64,000 nt of DNA from Diplonema japonicum. Taxonomy: Eukaryota > Protista > Euglenozoa: Diplonemea. The stretch covers positions 434,001 to 498,000 of the forward strand of contig OZ025687.1 in assembly GCA_964019335.1 (NCBI GenBank). The letters are read 5' to 3'. A program made the translations under genes and the position numbers. The stretch's first letter is position 1; each line of letters opens with the position of its first letter. This document shows positions 8,016 through 14,334 of this stretch, one piece after another. The notes under the pieces were generated by a model, which worked only from the letters and a program-made list of their open reading frames with translations, made no database searches and had not been told where the DNA came from.

Positions 8016-8138
8016 TGTTTTGTTTTGTTCTTTTTTTATGTTTTTTTTTTTTGTTTTTGTTTTGTTTCTTGTTTTTCTTTTTTTTTTTTTTTTAAAAAGA
8101 AAACAAAAAATTCTCATTTTTCTTATAAGAATGGCGGT

Positions 8139-10139
8139 ATGGGACCGAACAACCATGTGCTTTGCGGTGAATCGCCTGAAGGTCTTCTTTCTGTTCCTTC
8201 GAGCCGCACCCTTCAGTTGTACCCTGCTGCCTTCTGCACGGCATTGAACAATGTAGCCCTCGTGTTGCTGCGGTTTTTCCTTCTACCGAAGGTCATGCTG
8301 TTCATAAAGCGGCTGCGAAGGAAATCGTTGACGGAAAATCTCCCGACACCGCGGATGACGACCGAGATACTGAAACGGCAAAAACTATTCGCCAGCTGGC
8401 CGGCAAACCTCCTGGAGGAAGTCATAAACATGCTGAAACCCTTCACCTTTTACCCGCGCGAGTACATTATACACGAAGGCGAACCAGGAACAGGCATTCT
8501 GTTCTTAATACAAGGACAAGTCGAGGTTCTAAAACGAAAAAACCCCGGAGCATCAAAAAAACTAGGTAAGGACAACACAGTGTCTCAAGCAATTTTGAAC
8601 CCCGTGGCGGTCATCGGCGAATTCACAGCTCTGACAAGGGATAAAAGAAGAGCCTCGATTCGAGCTGTCGGCAACTCAACACTGTTGTTTCTAAGCAACG
8701 CAGATCTAGCATCGTTTCTACCAAGACTACCATCTGCCGCAAAGGAAAGCTCTGTCTCGACAATCTTGCAAGAAAGGGCGAAGGGGATGCTGGCTACCCA
8801 ACAGTTCACCAATACAAACCTCCGCGAGTACTGCCCGTTACTAAAATCCGCACCAGAAGACGTTCTGAACCATCTCCGAACAAAACTGGAACCGATGTCC
8901 TTCTACAAAGATGTCCCAATTCTGACACCAGGCACGAGGCCGGACAAGATATACTTCCTCGTCACCGGGAAATGCGAGCAAAGCTTTGAAAACACCACCG
9001 ACAAAACCATAATAAACCCACCTTTCACGTTCGGACACACCGAGGTTTTTCTAAACCGAAACTGCTCTGAAGCCGTTAAAACAGTCGCGACATGCGACAC
9101 TTGGATCCTATGGAAGTCCGACTTCGACAACATCAGATTCATCTCACCGCTAGCATGGTCTAGGATAACAGAAATCGCAACTGAACAAAACGCCGCTCAG
9201 CGGGATAAGTTCATTTCTATCGCACCGCATTTGATCCGTTCTATCCCGACAACGGCGGGGCTTTCTACTAAGCGGTGTTTGCGGCTTTTCAACAAGTTCG
9301 AGATGAAGCTGTACAACCCGTTGCAGCTTGTAGTGTCTGCGTCGCAGATAGCTGACCGCCTTCTTATCTTGGTTTCGGGACGGGTTTTGATCGCTGGTAA
9401 AGCATGGCGTATCTACGAGGCAATCGGTTTTACGTGTATTCACAACCATCGTTGGCCGCATGCTGCTGTCGCGCAGACGATCGTTGAATGTCTTGAGATC
9501 AGCGTGGAGGATTATACAGATTTCTTGAAACTGACCGGGAACTACGGGTCGGCGAAACAACTGTGCAAATGGCTGATGTTTCCAGGATGTTATGGGGCTG
9601 CGGAGCTCCTTCGCGGAAGGGACGCCACGTCGCATCTACAGGCACCTTTAATGTACCCAGTCAGCTCCCGACAACATGTAAACCAGTTAGAAACAGGTTT
9701 TGTAAGCATGACGAACCGGGTCAAGACAACATCCGCACCCAGTGAAATGAAAAAGTGCAACAAGCAGAAATCGGATGGTTCCTTACAAGCGAGGCTTGAT
9801 AGAGTACGTGGCCCTCAGGGGCACAGGAGTTCTGCTTGGGGAAGCCTTTTCAAGTGTTTCTCACAGAATACTGATGATTTCTTTTTGGAGTACGCGCTAA
9901 GGCAAACCAGTGTTGTTGAGGACTTCGTCAAGGAACGGTCTCCTTTGCACCGCCCCAAAAAGCTAAGAAGCCCTGTGCCGCTGACCCCCCACCCGCCTCC
10001 CCCTCCTGTGGACGTTGCCTGTCTTACCACGCGTTTCTACCCGGAGTATATGAAACCTGCGTCCATGCGCAGTCTTTCCGCCAACATCCCTAAACAGCGC
10101 TTCCTGTATGCAATGCCCTTCACACCTGTGCCTCATTAA
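8139..10139 (+). CDS. Cyclic-nucleotide-binding domain protein (about three tandem CNB domains)
   Basis: CNB signatures IIHEGEPGTGILFLIQGQVEV...IGEFTALTRDKRRASIRA, PGTRPDKIYFLVTGKC...FGHTEVF and ADRLLILVSGRV. First plausible ATG after the poly(T) spacer is at 8139. Confidence 0.85.
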   Translation: MGPNNHVLCGESPEGLLSVPSSRTLQLYPAAFCTALNNVALVLLRFFLLPKVMLFIKRLRRKSLTENLPTPRMTTEILKRQKLFASWPANLLEEVINMLKPFTFYPREYIIHEGEPGTGILFLIQGQVEVLKRKNPGASKKLGKDNTVSQAILNPVAVIGEFTALTRDKRRASIRAVGNSTLLFLSNADLASFLPRLPSAAKESSVSTILQERAKGMLATQQFTNTNLREYCPLLKSAPEDVLNHLRTKLEPMSFYKDVPILTPGTRPDKIYFLVTGKCEQSFENTTDKTIINPPFTFGHTEVFLNRNCSEAVKTVATCDTWILWKSDFDNIRFISPLAWSRITEIATEQNAAQRDKFISIAPHLIRSIPTTAGLSTKRCLRLFNKFEMKLYNPLQLVVSASQIADRLLILVSGRVLIAGKAWRIYEAIGFTCIHNHRWPHAAVAQTIVECLEISVEDYTDFLKLTGNYGSAKQLCKWLMFPGCYGAAELLRGRDATSHLQAPLMYPVSSRQHVNQLETGFVSMTNRVKTTSAPSEMKKCNKQKSDGSLQARLDRVRGPQGHRSSAWGSLFKCFSQNTDDFFLEYALRQTSVVEDFVKERSPLHRPKKLRSPVPLTPHPPPPPVDVACLTTRFYPEYMKPASMRSLSANIPKQRFLYAMPFTPVPH

Positions 10140-10206
10140 TCATAGGGGGTTTTTTTTTTTCTTTTCTTAAATATCCGACCTTACGATCGAGATTTTTTTT
10201 TTTTTT

Positions 10207-10426
10207 AAAAGGGTGGTCCTCAAGTGGGATTTGCCCTTAAACACCGCCTTTTTTTATTTTTGGTCGGGAAAAGTACTCTTCAAACCTGCTGGGACGCTAG
10301 TAGGAGCCGTTGAAGGGTGCCTCTCGCCTGAAGAGGTCAGCACCTGGAGGAGTCGCGAGATTTGACCGAAACTGAGGGATACCTAGTACTGACCATACCT
10401 AGTACTGACCATACCCCCACCCTTTT
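10207..10426. repeat. Small element with 10-bp inverted ends and an internal 16-bp tandem duplication, enclosing the hammerhead
   Basis: aaaagggtgg (10207-16) and ccaccctttt (10417-26); atacctagtactgacc twice (10379-10410). Confidence 0.45.
10322..10373 (+). ncRNA. Candidate hammerhead ribozyme, non-circularly permuted
   Basis: CUGAAGA (10328-34), GUC (10352-54) and GAAA (10368-71). Stem I tctcgc/gcgaga (6 bp), stem II ggtcag/ttgacc (6 bp including one G-U), stem III act/agt. Confidence 0.6.
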
Positions 10427-10580
10427 TAGGGCATGCAGCTTTCGTCTCAGGGAGCTGTTAATTTGAGTTTTTTTTTTTTTTCCGGTGATCGATTAGTGTG
10501 TGTTTTTTTTTTTTTTTTTTTTTTTGTTCTTCGATTCTTAACCTAACAAGGAAGGGGTGGGTGTTCAAAAAAAAAATTAA

Positions 10581-13500
10581 ATGCAGCGCCCCCCTAGACA
10601 GCCTTTTGCAAAGATCCCTCCCCCTAAGCCAGGGGAGCCACCCACCCTTCGGGTGCACAACAGTGGACATGTCTATACATTACCAGCGGGTGCGCTAAGA
10701 ACGACGATTGGTGCTGTGAAAAAGGGTTTGGAGAAATATGTCATGATGCACAAGGAGCACATACGATTGCTGTACAAAGACAGAGAGCTGCAAGACCACA
10801 TGACATTCCCTGAGATAGGATTCAATCCGGCTGTCGACCATCTGGAGCTTGTGACGAACGGCCAACAACGGCAGGGATCGCCCGCAGAGCCCACTACCGA
10901 ACTCCGGGTCATCAACACGGAAAACAACAAAGAGTTCGTGTTAAAGGTGAAGTGCAGCGACCCCAGCGGGTTGAAAGTCTCCTCTCTGAAGATGGCGATT
11001 GCAGGAGAAACCGGAATCCCACCTGAAGAGCAAACCCTCACCCACAAAGGGGTTGAACTGCGAGACACATGCGCCGGTGTCAACAGCCACATATACCTCA
11101 CCAGAGTCGGTGGTCAAATACAACGTGGTCAAGCGCCCCTTGGTCGGACGGGGCAGCCTGGAGGGACACATGCATACAACCAAACTGTAACACGTACCAC
11201 GACCAGCACCGCTGGCTTCGGTGCCATGGACCGGAATACCCTCCGCGTGCACGATCAGAACGGCAAAGTCTACACGCTGTCTGCAATGTCACTGAAGATG
11301 ACCATCGGGGCTGTCAAGAAGAACCTTGAGAGGTACGCAGAGTTGAGGAGAGAAGAGATGCATATCCTGTACAAAGGCCGGGAGCTCAATGACGAAGCGA
11401 CATGCAAAAGCATCGGGTTCTTTGCCGCAACAGACTATCTGGAGCTCGCGAGAGATGGTGGCGGCGGCCGAGGGGGCCGACCCAGACCCTCTCCCTTTAC
11501 CAACGCATCCACTGCTCAGCAGGCTGCGGCACAAGAGGTACCCTTCTCTGAGATCCGCGTTATCAACACGGAAGACAACAAAGAGTTCGCCTTGAAGATA
11601 CGATGCAATGATCTCAGCGGGCTGAAGGTCTCGTCTCTGAAGACTGCGATGGCAGCAAAAACTAATATTCCCCCCGAGGAGCAGACGCTGACGCACAAGG
11701 GGGCCGAACTGCCCGACACGGGCACATGCGCTGGTGTCGACGGCCCTGTGTACCTTAGCAAGAAGTTTGCGTCCCCCCAGCAGGCGGGTCCTTTGCCAGC
11801 TGGACAGCCGTTGGGAAACTTAAGCGGTGATGGTGGTCAGCAAGCGCAGCAGTTCGCTGGCACTGTCAGCAACAAGGTTGCCGCGCAGTACCAGGCCCTC
11901 CAAGGGCTTCGCATTGTGGACGACAACGCCAAGGTGTACACACTAAAGCAGAAGGGACTGGACATGCTGGCCATGCCAATAGGAAACATCAAGCAAGTTC
12001 TAGTGAAGGATGCCGAGCTTCCCAAGGAAGAGATCCTGCTCTTCTACAAGGGCAGGGAGCTGACCGACAAAGCAACGTGCAAGGGCGTGGGCTTCGTGTC
12101 AGGAGTCGACACACTGCAGTTAAGAAGAAAAGACGAAAAGAAATCAGTAAAGCCACCCGAAGGACCTGACACCAATACAGAAGCAAAGACAGCTCAAGGG
12201 AAGGCGGTGACTGTTGTGAATGTCAACCAGCAAACAGAGCATCGCATGCACACGCAGTTTGCCAACCTCGTGAACTTAAAAGTAGATGCTCTCAAAACAT
12301 TCCTAGCCAGGGAGACAAGCATCCCCGTAGACCAACAGGTCCTCCTGTACCGTGGCAGGGAGATCACCGACCACTGCGGTGGCATCGAAGACAAGATCTA
12401 TCTCAGCAAAGTGGGCGACCCGCCACCCGATGTCGCGTACATAGAAGAAGTCATGGCCGCGAGAAAGGGCGACAAGAAGGATGATGCCCCAGCAGGTGCT
12501 GATCCTTCTGGAACTAACGATATGGTCCCTGTTAGGGATACTGGCGACAAGCCGTGCGGGGTTGTGGTGGAATATGTAACTGCAGGGGGTGTCAAGCAGC
12601 TTAGGCTTGACGGCTCCGCGGACATGTTTCATGTGAAGGGGCGGCACTTGAAAGCAGCTCTGAAGAATGATACTAAGTTAGACACCTTGGACATGGAGCT
12701 TCGATGGGAAGGGAAGGTGCTCAGCGACGAGCAGACATGCATGGAACTCGGGTTGAAGGCAGGGGACAAGCTGCAACTGGTAACAACCGTGGACCCTACT
12801 ACACATCTCAAGGAGGCGCGTAATGTGCGTGTGGTGAACCTCAACGTGAAGCCGCACAAGGAGTACGCAGTGCACAGCGTAGGTGCAGACGTGAGTATCA
12901 TGACAGGCGCAGGCATCAAAAAGGCACTGTCGCACCTTTTCACATACGAAGAGGGCTCGCGCCTCTACCTGGACAACACAGAGCTTCTCGACGACCAAAC
13001 ATGCAGGGACCTCAAGCCCGCTGCGCCCGACTACACCCTCTTCTTGTGCGAGAGGCCTCCAGAGACCATCGTCTCTTCGTTCCTGCTCGACCCCAACACG
13101 CCTGCCATCCAGCTGGAACACAGCCCCGTCGCCTCCATCGGGAACATCAGGGAACTGCTGAGGAAGACTGACGCTCTGAAACATGACAACTTCTACCTCA
13201 CCTTTCAGGGGAATCCCTGCTCCGACCTGGAGCCTGTGGGGGTGCGCCGAGTATTCGGTGTCGTGAAGACGACGAAGACTCACAGGAACATGAGGAAGCG
13301 GCGGTTCTCAATGCCCGAGGGGCGCGTAATGCAGAAGTTCTACCGAATGGAGGTGAATATGCCACGCGACCCGTGGCTTGCGTTTGGCTTCAGAGTAGGC
13401 GCGTGGGAGGGGTTGGAGAGGTCGTCGGCAGCACCAACAGCACGGTGGGGACGGGCCCTCAAGCACTACCAGAAGGACCGTGTCTTCCAAGGTCGGAAGC

Positions 13501-14334
13501 GGTCGGCATCGCAAGTCGCCATGCCTACCGACATGCCGTCTGACACTTGGTTTCAACAACTAGGGTACCGTCTGCCTGTAGTCCTGACCCTGCCTTCAAA
13601 GACAAGGGTGGTACTGGAGCAGAGGGTAGAATCGCCGATAAGATTCACTGCTGGCGAGCTTGTACCCCACCCAAGCCCTACACGAAAGAGGCTTGAAGAG
13701 GAACCACAGAGCCCAGTAGCAGGGTCGCCTTATGAAACCAGGACACAAGGTGTGACCACAACAGCGCATGAAGACGAACGGGAACGACAGCAGGAGCAGG
13801 GTTGGGAACAGGAGAACGAAGAGGCGAACGAGAAAGAGCGGGCACGAATGAAAAGCACGACCCGCTACAGTAGTACAGGGCCACGTGAAGCACGGACCCA
13901 ATCTACTTCCCAACAGGCTCATGGTATCGACTGGAAAACCTTGTCAGGAACGATGAAAAAAACCCACCATGTGGCTATGGGTTTGTCACATTCGAAGCCC
14001 GCTGAGGGCAAGACACCGCATGATGACCCTGAACGGTTGCACACTAACAGAGGGAAGGTCCTTGCCACCCCTCAGGCCTTACGAGCAGCATCTCTCCACC
14101 GAACACTCGCACCCACTACCGGATCCACGTGGGGCACGGCGAAGGGCGAGCGGACTCCTTCAGCCTCAGGGCCCGTCCCCAACCCTGTGTTCACCAGCAC
14201 CTCGAACCCCGTAGATCGACTCACGATGATTGAGGTATGAATGGGGAAATATCCGGGAGGGAGGAAGGAAAATAAAATCACAGAACATCTTAACATCCCG
14301 TTCCAACACTACCCACCGCACCGTTCCGAAGTAG
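10581..14334 (+). CDS. Large protein with at least 8 tandem ubiquitin-like domains and a low-complexity C-terminus; join(10581-14234,14284-14334)
   Basis: 1219-aa ORF with repeated Ubl motifs (LLYKDREL, TGIPPEEQTLTHKG, LFYKGRELTD, LRWEGKVLSDEQT). Probable terminal intron gtatga...cacag at 14235-14283. Confidence 0.85.

What the first reader, a model, noticed from the sequence alone, without database searches (positions are those of the whole stretch)
10322..10373. Complete hammerhead ribozyme core in non-circularly permuted order, in an intergenic spacer
Seen: all catalytic-core elements lie within 52 nt with correct pairing: stem I 5' strand tctcgc + CUGAAGA + stem II 5' strand ggtcag; then agUC (predicted cut after C10354) + stem I 3' strand gcgaga; then a 1-nt linker, stem II 3' strand ttgacc + GAAA + cu closing stem III. 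Known: types I, II and III hammerheads are circular permutations with strand order CUGANGA, GAAA, NUH. Here the order is CUGANGA, NUH, GAAA, which standard descriptors miss; natural non-circular hammerhead permutations have been described only recently. Inference: it is on the sense strand of a unidirectional gene cluster, between a stop (10139) and a start (10581), so it could cut the precursor transcript or be the relic of a small ribozyme-bearing mobile element. Stem III is short and the 1-nt linker is tight, so it may work as a dimer or be inactive.
Basis: partly seen in the sequence, partly recalled or inferred. Interest (0 to 1): 0.85.

Follow-up and report, generated by a model that had tools for sequence, protein, structure and literature searches.

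The report
Rewired hammerhead ribozyme inside a SINE
The flagged 52 bases are one copy of a short jumping element, present a few hundred times in a spliced-leader (euglenozoan-type) protist genome, that carries a complete hammerhead self-cutting RNA wired in the rare "type CSG" order described in 2023; paired compensating mutations show that two of its stems really form, but cutting itself is untested.

Summary
It is not a locus-specific spacer signal. It lies in a roughly 194-nt dispersed element (window about 10262-10467) with 143-157 recognisable copies in this 62.5-Mb genome, almost always in the sense orientation of the gene arrays.

The strand order (CUGANGA block, cleavage-site block, GAAA block) is the "type CSG" non-circular hammerhead permutation of Eckert et al. 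2023 (NAR). That type was known from only five soil-metagenome sequences, two of which cleave in vitro.

Subfamilies of the element differ by three compensatory double changes:
- Stem I: C-G to U-A.
- Stem II: G-C to A-U, and U-A to A-U.

One subfamily differs from another by only three bases in about 216, all in stem II. No nested alternative fold explains this. A further helix joining the far ends of stems I and II mirrors the validated CSG ribozymes.

Stem III is only 3 bp, but a conserved complementary helix could extend it. I found no RNA data, so self-cleavage after C10354 remains an inference.

Earlier reports of this scan (s1-869276, s1-864478) found the same element on other DNA but called the order unreported. 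I file it as a new, eukaryotic, SINE-borne member of the known type-CSG kind.

The parts
10262..10467 (+). One copy of a dispersed, tail-less SINE-like element (short form, about 194 nt in most copies; 206 nt here because of a 16-nt internal duplication and a small deletion). It sits between T tracts (about 10249-10261 and 10468-10481).
   Evidence: Own-genome DNA searches. Boundaries GGTCGGG...TTTGAG read from 51 copies with flanks. Short-read contigs of 4 runs break here, with depth 100-1000 times that of the flanks.
10322..10327 (+). Stem I, 5' strand (positions 2.6-2.1), UCUCGC.
   Evidence: Pairs with 10355-10360. Pair 10325/10357 is C-G in 30 and U-A in 16 distinct rows.
10328..10334 (+). 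Core C3-A9, CUGAAGA (block C).
   Evidence: Read directly. N7 is A or U among copies, the one position the hammerhead core leaves free.
10335..10340 (+). Stem II, 5' strand (10.1-10.6), GGUCAG. Only the first 4-5 pairs are conserved.
   Evidence: Pairs 10336/10366 (G-C 37, A-U 15) and 10337/10365 (U-A 28, A-U 17) show compensatory change. The closing G10.1-C11.1 pair is kept in 48 of 54 distinct rows.
10340..10345 (+). 3' strand of a candidate helix (with 10315-10320) that ties the far ends of stems I and II together.
   Evidence: 98.5% of cells paired, with G-C/G-U alternation only. The register including C10320-G10340 comes from the MFE fold. The analogous helix is GCGG/CCGC in CSG-1.
10315..10320 (+). 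5' strand of the candidate stem I-stem II bridging helix, GGGUGC.
10351..10354 (+). Block S: stem III 3' strand A16.3 G16.2 U16.1, then C17. Predicted cleavage is between C10354 and G10355.
   Evidence: Position read by analogy with the hammerhead core. GUC is kept in most copies. Cleavage was not tested.
10355..10360 (+). Stem I, 3' strand (1.1-1.6), GCGAGA.
10361..10367 (+). Linker U10361, then stem II 3' strand UUGACC (11.6-11.1). The effective linker is 2-3 nt.
   Evidence: Pairs 10339/10363 and 10340/10362 are unpaired in 17 and 20 of 54 distinct rows.
10368..10373 (+). Block G: G12 A13 A14 A15.1, then C15.2 U15.3 (stem III 5' strand).
   Evidence: Read directly. Stem III is 96.9% paired with no compensatory change.
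10374..10382 (+). Candidate helix with 10273-10280 (GUACUCUC / GAGAG-A-UAC). It continues the stem III strand and could stabilise the 3-bp stem III.
   Evidence: Predicted in the MFE of a full copy. 76-93% paired per position, with only one-sided changes. Inference.
10273..10280 (+). 5' strand of the candidate helix that abuts stem III.
10381..10412 (+). 16-nt tandem duplication (ACCTAGTACTGACCAT twice) private to this copy, outside the ribozyme.
   Evidence: There are two offset matches of the 22-mer anchor at C40:444378 and C40:444394.

Best explanation
Window 10315-10382 encodes a hammerhead ribozyme of the non-circular 'type CSG' permutation. It sits in the middle of a roughly 194-nt SINE-like element that has spread to a few hundred places in this genome.

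**Proposed fold**
- The element lies in the sense orientation inside T-rich spacers of unidirectional gene arrays, so it is probably transcribed as part of the long precursor RNAs.
- Stem I (10322-27/10355-60) and stem II (10335-39/10363-67) form a pseudoknot.
- CUGAAGA, GAAA and GUC sit at the three-way junction.
- A short stem III (10351-53/10371-73) closes the core and may be propped by an adjoining helix (10273-80/10374-82).
- A further helix (10315-20/10340-45) holds stems I and II side by side.

**Proposed action**
- The RNA would cut itself between C10354 and G10355, leaving a 2',3'-cyclic phosphate and a 5'-OH.
- Each subfamily was copied many times after compensating stem mutations arose. 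Selection for the fold therefore acted on the source copies, that is, on the element's own propagation.
- Individual insertions decay: about half still have a complete motif.

**Shown and inferred**
- Shown: the motif, the repeat family, the sense orientation, and compensatory evolution of stems I and II.
- Inferred: the catalytic fold, cleavage, and the role of cleavage in the element's life cycle. By analogy with other ribozyme-bearing retroposons, that role would be processing of element RNA out of host transcripts.
For: **Motif and block order**
- The motif is exact at the given coordinates and is the only one in the window. None appeared at this stringency in 300 shuffles.
- The block order equals type CSG of Eckert et al. 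2023. CSG-1 and CSG-2 cleave at the analogous site, and that paper notes a helix bringing stems I and II together.

**Repeat family**
- 157 matches to the C-to-S segment with at most 2 mismatches, against 2 for the reversed control.
- 143 matches to a 22-mer outside the ribozyme, against 0 for the control.

**Covariation on 71 copies (54 distinct rows)**
- 92.3% of cells are paired.
- Three pairs show compensatory change, covering 48 cells against 19 +/- 2.9 in shuffles (0 of 500 reach the observed value).
- Covariation score is 0.163, against 0.104 in shuffles and at most 0.075 when partners are slid.

**Subfamily-diagnostic differences**
- Sub1 and sub3 differ at only 3 of about 216 positions, all in stem II. 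Two of them are partners.
- Sub1 and sub2 differ at 11 positions, and four of these make two compensatory pairs.
- My estimate of the chance probability is about 1e-7 overall.

**Other support**
- Rare intermediates with a mismatch exist.
- The best nested consensus fold is weak (-4.1 kcal/mol) and has no compensatory pair.
- N7 varies A/U while the rest of the core is kept.
- The G10.1-C11.1 pair is kept.
- Orientation relative to the longest flanking ORF is 31 same to 1 opposite.
- The same variant positions are seen in contigs of runs from three studies.
Against: - Self-cleavage has not been shown. No RNA run holds the region, and the laid data are contigs only.
- Stem III is only 3 bp and shows no compensatory change. 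The validated CSG ribozymes have about 9 bp by my reading of their oligonucleotides, and even they are slow (kobs 0.004 and 0.026 per min).
- The bridging helix and the helix abutting stem III rest on conserved complementarity and one-sided changes only.
- The three compensatory events are few, and two lie on one lineage.
- The cleavage site is internal to the element, about 93 nt from its 5' end. No copies start or end there. Simple 'end-making' therefore does not explain why the element keeps the ribozyme.
- MFE folding of the region is no better than shuffles, although such programs cannot see pseudoknots.
- No relatives outside this genome were found.
Confidence: 0.72

Rival explanations
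1. A structured but catalytically dead RNA module. The pseudoknot is kept because the element's reverse transcriptase or another factor recognises it. It may descend from a hammerhead, but with a 3-bp stem III and a tight stem I-stem II connection it no longer cuts at a useful rate.
For: - Compensatory change shows only that stems I and II matter, not that catalysis does.
- Stem III is minimal and does not covary.
- The cleavage site is not an element boundary.
- Known CSG ribozymes are slow.
- Earlier notes of the scan report other conserved, non-catalytic-looking 3' RNA folds in retroelements of this genome (unchecked).
Against: - All 11 invariant core nucleotides, the G10.1-C11.1 pair and a GUC triplet sit exactly at the junctions of two helices that covary. 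That is about 2e-7 by chance for a given pseudoknot (my estimate).
- These features are kept in all three amplified subfamilies, while the one free core position varies.
- A recognition module has no need for these particular bases.
Confidence: 0.2
2. The ribozyme acts only as a dimer or in trans. Two copies, or a tandem pair, would complement each other to build a longer stem III, as in Penelope-associated minimal hammerheads.
For: - Stem III is short.
- A few loci carry two copies 275-476 nt apart (L012, L027).
- Dimeric action of small hammerheads with short stem III is known (my knowledge of Lunse, Weinberg and Breaker 2017, not re-read here).
Against: - Most copies are solitary.
- The strands flanking stem III are not self-complementary.
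- An intramolecular helix (10273-80/10374-82) can prop stem III instead.
Confidence: 0.05
3. A chance resemblance: an ordinary repeat that happens to contain hammerhead-like words, with no selected structure.
For: - About 0.01 such matches are expected per window, which adds up to many across a scan of this size.
- Core-triad patterns without helices occur about 100 times in the genome by chance (control).
Against: - Three compensatory double changes fall exactly in helices that were predicted beforehand from one sequence.
- Slid and shuffled controls score far lower.
- One subfamily is defined solely by stem II changes.
Confidence: 0.03

Closest known systems
Type-CSG hammerhead ribozymes (Eckert, Friedrich, Weinberg and Weinberg, Nucleic Acids Res 2023, PMC10085705)
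   Same: - The same 5'-to-3' block order: CUGAnGA block, cleavage-site block, GAAA block.
- The same complete core.
- Stems I and II are pseudoknotted.
- About 10 nt separate the stem II 5' strand from the site block.
- A helix between the sequence just upstream of stem I and the sequence just downstream of the stem II 5' strand pulls stems I and II together (GCGG/CCGC in CSG-1; GGGUGC/GCACCU here).
   Different: - The known examples are 5 similar sequences from soil-metagenome DNA, with no host or genetic context and little covariation (3 pairs by R2R, 0 by R-scape).
- They have a stem III of about 9 bp and a 5-nt stem I-stem II linker (my reading of the oligonucleotides).
- Here stem III is 3 bp and the linker is 1-3 nt.
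- Here the motif sits inside a SINE-like element with a few hundred copies in a eukaryote.
- There is no sequence similarity beyond the core.
Type-SGC hammerhead ribozymes (HRIMA-1 and variants, same paper)
   Same: - A non-circular permutation.
- It contains the same direct connection from the stem I 3' strand to the stem II 3' strand, through a linker of typically three nucleotides.
   Different: - Block order is S-G-C.
- They occur in metatranscriptomes, on RNAs that carry hairpin ribozymes on the other strand (putative circular RNA replicons), not in a genomic SINE.
Sm-alpha / Sj-alpha SINE-like elements of Schistosoma with an internal hammerhead
   Same: A short interspersed, high-copy, non-coding element that carries a hammerhead motif internally rather than at an end (citing Ferbeyre et al. 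1998 and Laha et al. 2000).
   Different: - Those are canonical, circularly permuted hammerheads found by Rfam-type searches.
- They occur in animals.
- They are also arranged as satellite arrays.
Retrozymes and Penelope-like-element hammerheads
   Same: Non-autonomous retroelements whose spread depends on a hammerhead-bearing RNA (PMC4918200; bioRxiv 10.64898/2026.07.22.740005).
   Different: - Retrozymes have two ribozymes (LTRs or tandem units) that release a unit-length RNA, which is then circularised.
- Here copies are mostly solitary, with a single internal ribozyme.
- No partner element was identified.
HDV-like ribozymes at the 5' end of trypanosomatid L1Tc/NARTc (Pr77)
   Same: A self-cleaving RNA carried by retroposons that ride in polycistronic transcripts of a spliced-leader organism.
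   Different: - A different ribozyme class.
- It is placed at the very 5' end, where cleavage defines the element's RNA terminus. Here the site is internal.

Membership tests
Hammerhead ribozyme (catalytic core) | C3 U4 G5 A6 N7 G8 A9 lies directly between stem I and stem II. | tested here: met
   CUGAAGA at 10328-10334. It is kept in the family, with N7 = A or U.
Hammerhead ribozyme (catalytic core) | G12 A13 A14 followed by A15.1, lying directly between stem II and stem III. | tested here: met
   GAAA at 10368-10371 follows stem II's 3' strand without a gap. It is kept in most copies; some decayed copies have lost or gained an A.
Hammerhead ribozyme (catalytic core) | U16.1 paired to A15.1, then H17 (not G), directly 5' of stem I's 3' strand. 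| tested here: met
   G10352 U10353 C10354 followed by GCGAGA. U-A at 10353/10371 in 48 of 54 distinct rows.
Hammerhead ribozyme (catalytic core) | Three helices meet at the core, supported by covariation. | tested here: inconclusive
   Stems I and II are met, with 1 and 2 pairs showing compensatory change. Stem III is 3 bp, 96.9% paired, with one-sided changes only.
Hammerhead ribozyme (catalytic core) | Tertiary contact or helix bringing stems I and II together. | tested here: inconclusive
   The candidate helix 10315-20/10340-45 is 98.5% paired and shows G-C/G-U alternation but no double change.
Hammerhead ribozyme (catalytic core) | Mg2+-dependent self-cleavage 3' of H17, giving a 2',3'-cyclic phosphate and a 5'-OH. 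| not testable with these tools
   No RNA runs were found. The laid data are contigs.
Type-CSG permutation (Eckert et al. 2023) | Uninterrupted blocks in the 5'-to-3' order C, S, G, with stems forming pseudoknots. | tested here: met
   My scan of all six orders returns order 'ACB', which is C-S-G.
Rfam hammerhead families | A match to a hammerhead covariance model. | tested here: not met
   No hammerhead hit even at E up to 10. This is expected, because those models describe nested, circularly permuted forms and cannot match a pseudoknotted order.
SINE-like non-autonomous retroposon | Short, non-coding, dispersed in many copies with defined ends and subfamilies. | tested here: met
   143-157 copies against controls of 0-2. 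Ends GGTCGGG...TTTGAG, about 194 nt; a long form has about 62 further 5' nt. Three subfamilies.
SINE-like non-autonomous retroposon | Target-site duplications, an internal promoter, and a partner reverse transcriptase. | tested here: inconclusive
   Both flanks are T tracts, so duplications cannot be read. No partner was found among the fetched loci. Further genome DNA could not be fetched.
Retrozyme (non-LTR, tandem) | Two or more ribozyme sites in direct repeat, releasing a unit-length RNA. | tested here: not met
   Most copies are solitary. Only a few pairs lie 275-476 nt apart.
Trypanosoma cruzi SIRE/VIPER (my first guess, from memory) | A T. cruzi genome, and an element forming the ends of a tyrosine-recombinase retroelement. 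| tested here: not met
   All listed spliced-leader matches (232 in total) read ...CTGTACTTTATTG, not the ...ACTATATTG that I recall for Trypanosoma. No longer element was seen upstream of the long form.

The most novel reading that the evidence does not exclude
This would be the first natural non-circularly permuted ribozyme with a known host and genetic context. An active type-CSG hammerhead would be maintained by a euglenozoan SINE because self-cleavage, perhaps with religation or circularisation, is a step in the element's propagation from polycistronic transcripts. With hundreds of natural variants, the family would also be a ready-made mutational series for studying how a pseudoknotted hammerhead folds.
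Probability: 0.45. Interest if true: 0.78.

Novelty: new member of a known kind. Interest (0 to 1): 0.64.

Why it matters
- **Rarity.** Non-circular permutations of structured RNAs have been reported only once. For type CSG the authors themselves called the evidence for biological relevance weaker, because there were so few sequences and covariation events.
- **What this family adds.** It supplies what was missing: a defined eukaryotic host, a genetic context (a SINE riding in polycistronic gene arrays), hundreds of copies, and clear compensatory evolution of two stems.
- **Detection.** It shows that standard ribozyme searches miss such elements (no Rfam hit). Ribozyme-bearing retroposons may therefore be more varied than canonical descriptors suggest.
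- **If cleavage is confirmed.** It gives a tractable system for asking what an internal ribozyme does for a retroposon. It also opens the question of whether cutting in intergenic spacers affects processing of neighbouring mRNAs in a spliced-leader organism.

Tried and rejected
1. **Rfam.** cmscan of the region in E-value mode, and of the window plus three loci at gathering thresholds, gave no ribozyme hit.
2. **Nested folding.**
   - The MFE of 10300-10400 has z = +0.5 and uses other pairings.
   - The RNAalifold consensus is -4.1 kcal/mol with no compensatory pair.
   - The alternative pairing of GGUCAG with the downstream CUGACC is not supported, because CUGACC stays constant while stem II covaries with its proximal partner.
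3. **My early idea that this is T. cruzi SIRE / the VIPER 3' end.** It came from memory and I dropped it.
4. **RNA evidence.** The look-up of sequencing runs found no RNA run. Read laying gave contigs only: no ends and no empty site.
5. **Relatives elsewhere.** Two metagenome pattern scans found nothing, and a phage-collection BLAST found nothing.
6. **A second CSG-type family in the genome.** None was seen among the core-triad matches.
7. **An HDV-like ribozyme in the 5' module of the long form.** Rfam gave no hit, and I did not analyse it further.
8. **An unbiased re-sampling of copies anchored outside the ribozyme.** I could only cross-tabulate coordinates by hand: about half of the anchored copies keep an exact core triad, as expected for neutral decay.
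9. **A sensitive BLAST of the element against the window without a low-complexity filter.** It returned only poly-T noise.

Full report
**Observation**

- UCUCGC (stem I 5' strand), then CUGAAGA, then GGUCAG (stem II 5' strand).
- A 10-nt stretch, CACCUGGAGG.
- AG-UC, then GCGAGA (stem I 3' strand), then U.
- UUGACC (stem II 3' strand), then GAAA, then CU.

Stem I has six Watson-Crick pairs. Stem II has five plus a G-U. Stem III has A-U, C-G and U-A. The site lies between a stop at 10139 and an ATG at 10581, in a window whose long ORFs are all on the + strand.

I wrote a descriptor for the three hammerhead strands in any of their six linear orders and ran it on both strands.
- It found this one site in the window, in order C-S-G.
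- Block-wise dinucleotide shuffles gave 0.27 hits per window at stems of at least 4, 4 and 2 bp, 0.057 at 5, 5 and 2 bp, and none in 300 at the observed lengths.
- That is about 0.01 per window by extrapolation. It is suggestive but not decisive for a scan of many thousands of windows.
- Rfam finds nothing, and nested folding of the region is unremarkable. Both are expected for a pseudoknotted arrangement.

**The motif belongs to a dispersed repeat**

A search of the window's own genome (62.5 Mb, 132 contigs) with 121 bases around the site returned dozens of copies at 90-98% identity. A longer query showed that the repeat spans about 10249-10481.

Copy counts:
- The pattern CTGANGA-N6-CACNTGGAGGAGTC with up to two mismatches has 157 matches, against 2 for the reversed control.
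- A 22-mer from outside the ribozyme has 143 matches, against 0.

Structure of the element, from copies with their flanks:
- The short form runs from GGTCGGG to TTTGAG and is about 194 nt.
- It is nested between T tracts on both sides.
- A long form carries about 62 further bases at the 5' end.
- The window's copy has a private 16-nt duplication (10381-10412) and a small deletion, but an intact ribozyme motif.

Other properties:
- Short-read contigs from four runs in three studies break at the element. Its depth is 100-1000 times that of the flanks, and the same variable positions are seen.
- In 43 distinct 3-kb loci, the longest flanking ORF of at least 250 aa is on the element's strand in 31 and on the other strand in 1. 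The ribozyme strand is therefore the strand expected to be transcribed.

The genome carries 232 copies of the conserved 3' part of the euglenozoan spliced leader (...CAGTTTCTGTACTTTATTG). It also has T-rich spacers and one-way gene arrays. I therefore call it a spliced-leader (euglenozoan-type) protist. My first guess, T. cruzi SIRE, came from memory and did not survive.

**Evidence that the helices are real**

I collected 98 distinct copies. They fall into subfamilies:
- Sub1, like the window copy: UCUCGC/GCGAGA and GGUCAG/UUGACC.
- Sub2: (U/A)CUUGC/GCAAGA and GAUCAG/UAGAUC.
- Sub3: UCUCGC/GCGAGA and GGACAG/AUGUCC.

Three base pairs have therefore changed on both sides while staying complementary:
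- 10325/10357, C-G to U-A.
- 10336/10366, G-C to A-U.
- 10337/10365, U-A to A-U.

Rare copies carry the half-changed, mismatched intermediates.

I counted the pairs on 71 copies (54 distinct rows), using the structure fixed beforehand from the window copy:
- 92.3% of cells are paired.
- 48 cells carry a double change, against 19 +/- 2.9 in column shuffles (0 of 500 reach it).
- The covariation score is 0.163, against 0.104 in shuffles and at most 0.075 when partners are slid by 1-3 columns.

Copies are related, so I also counted events rather than cells:
- Sub1 and sub3 differ at only three positions in about 216, all in stem II. Two of the three are partners.
- Sub1 and sub2 differ at 11 positions, four of which form two compensatory pairs.
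- For substitutions thrown at random on 216 positions with 15 predefined pairs, I estimate about 6e-4 and about 1e-4 respectively. Together that is about 1e-7.

RNAalifold, which cannot draw pseudoknots, finds only a weak nested consensus with no compensatory pair.

The downstream CUGACC, which the MFE pairs with the stem II 5' strand, is constant while stem II changes. That alternative pairing is therefore not the selected one.

**Why I read it as a hammerhead and not just a pseudoknot**

Two helices that covary meet at CUGANGA. Helix II is followed at once by GAAA. Helix I's 3' strand is preceded at once by GUC. The first pair of stem II is G-C, and the only core position that varies among copies is N7 (A or U). 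For a given pair of helices, that combination has a chance of about 2e-7 (my estimate).

The arrangement is also not a classical H-type pseudoknot. A 1-3-nt connection from the end of helix I to the start of helix II's 3' strand cannot cross a 6-bp helix in a coaxial stack. It does fit two helices lying side by side, as stems I and II do in the hammerhead. This last point is an inference from known structures.

**Comparison with what is known**

Eckert, Friedrich, Weinberg and Weinberg (2023) divided the hammerhead into blocks C, G and S. They showed that non-circular orders exist in nature:
- Type SGC has many examples.
- Type CSG has five similar soil-metagenome DNA sequences. Two were tested, and both cleaved at the expected site with kobs of 0.004 and 0.026 per min.
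- They judged the CSG evidence weaker because covariation was scarce.

Our order is C-S-G. From the published oligonucleotides, CSG-1 reads GCGG-U-UGGUUG-CUGAUGA-GGGGU-G-CCGC-...-GUC-CAACCA-UUAAU-ACCCC-GAAA-CAAC.... This shows:
- A helix (GCGG/CCGC) joins the sequence just 5' of stem I to the sequence just 3' of stem II's 5' strand.
- Our element has the same feature: GGGUGC (10315-20) with GCACCU (10340-45). It is 98.5% paired among copies, with G-C/G-U alternation.

- The two distal stem II pairs are unpaired in 17 and 20 of 54 distinct rows.
- G10340 can pair with C10320 instead.
- Stem II is therefore 4-5 bp and the linker 2-3 nt.
- The identical stem I to stem II junction in type SGC typically has three nucleotides.

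The real difference is stem III: 3 bp here against about 9 bp in CSG-1.
- A conserved complementary stretch, GUACUCUC (10273-80) with GAGAG-A-UAC (10374-82), continues the GAAACU strand directly. It appears in the MFE of a full copy.
- It could act as a nicked extension of stem III.
- Its support is conservation and wobble-compatible changes only.

I found no paper other than Eckert et al. that mentions type CSG. I found none on hammerheads in euglenozoans.

Two earlier reports of this scan (s1-869276, s1-864478) describe the same element on other DNA, with the same conclusion about compensating mutations. They state that the wiring had never been reported. On that point I disagree.

**Likely mechanism and open points**

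- Each subfamily multiplied after its compensatory changes. Selection for the fold therefore acted on source copies, that is, on the element's ability to propagate.
- Individual insertions then decay. 47 of 98 sampled copies keep the full motif. About half of the copies anchored outside the ribozyme keep an exact core triad (my cross-tabulation). That is about what neutral decay predicts.
- The predicted cut lies about 93 nt inside the element, and no copies begin or end there. The ribozyme therefore does not simply make an element terminus, as the HDV-like ribozyme of L1Tc does.

Possible roles, none tested:
- Release of an RNA part used for reverse transcription.
- A cleavage-religation equilibrium. 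The pseudoknot would hold the products together.
- Circular or tandem intermediates. A few tandem pairs exist.
- Recognition of the fold by the partner enzyme.

The insertion into T tracts and the near-exclusive sense orientation may follow from the insertion mechanism or from host selection. I could not separate the two.

**Verdict**

- This is a new member of the type-CSG kind: eukaryotic, SINE-borne, with many copies.
- Catalysis is still to be shown.

Noticed in passing
L077, L090, L099, L106, L108, L110, L114, L117, L119-L121, L123, L124: A longer composite repeat family contains a broken copy of the element. There is a 29-nt insertion flanked by a duplicated CACCTGAAGA inside the core, and the GAAAC-to-ACC segment is deleted. 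More than 250 nt of other shared sequence follows, including repeated AATGTCCGGAAG units. This ribozyme is certainly dead, and the larger element is unidentified.
   Followed up: partly
L024:1441-1502 and equivalents in L018, L019, L027-L029, L032, L034, L035, L037: Many sub2 copies carry an extra 5' module of about 62 nt (GCAGGAGCC...GCGGAGACCGT) with variable 5' ends. L005 and some loose ends in other runs show a different module ending in the same GCGGAGACCGT. Rfam finds nothing in it. Earlier scan notes report HDV-like ribozyme-headed SINEs in this genome. I did not establish whether this module is related.
   Followed up: partly
Own genome, 232 places: The 3' part of the spliced leader (CAGTTTCTGTACTTTATTG) is scattered over most contigs, often within a few kb of contig ends, rather than only in a tandem SL-RNA gene array.
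   Followed up: no
window 10192-10260; also L059/L023 and L042 upstream of their copies: Just upstream of the element lies a T tract followed by AAAAGGG(T)GGTCCTCAAG. Similar strings precede other copies, and contig depth there is as high as in the element. This is possibly another short repeat, or a preferred target.
   Followed up: no
window 10581-14240 (+) and 8025-10139 (+): The downstream ORF (1219 aa) holds at least five ubiquitin-family domains. The upstream ORF (704 aa as listed, from a TTG) holds two cyclic-nucleotide-binding domains.
   Followed up: no
L012:1234-1715; L027:1501-2182: Two loci carry two copies of the element in direct orientation, 275 and 476 nt apart. In L012 the two copies belong to different subfamilies.
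   Followed up: no
window 10320-10324 with 10346-10350: CCUCU can pair with the conserved GGAGG of the linker. This alternative 5-bp helix would compete with stem I and could hold the ribozyme in an inactive fold. It is weaker in sub2.
   Followed up: no
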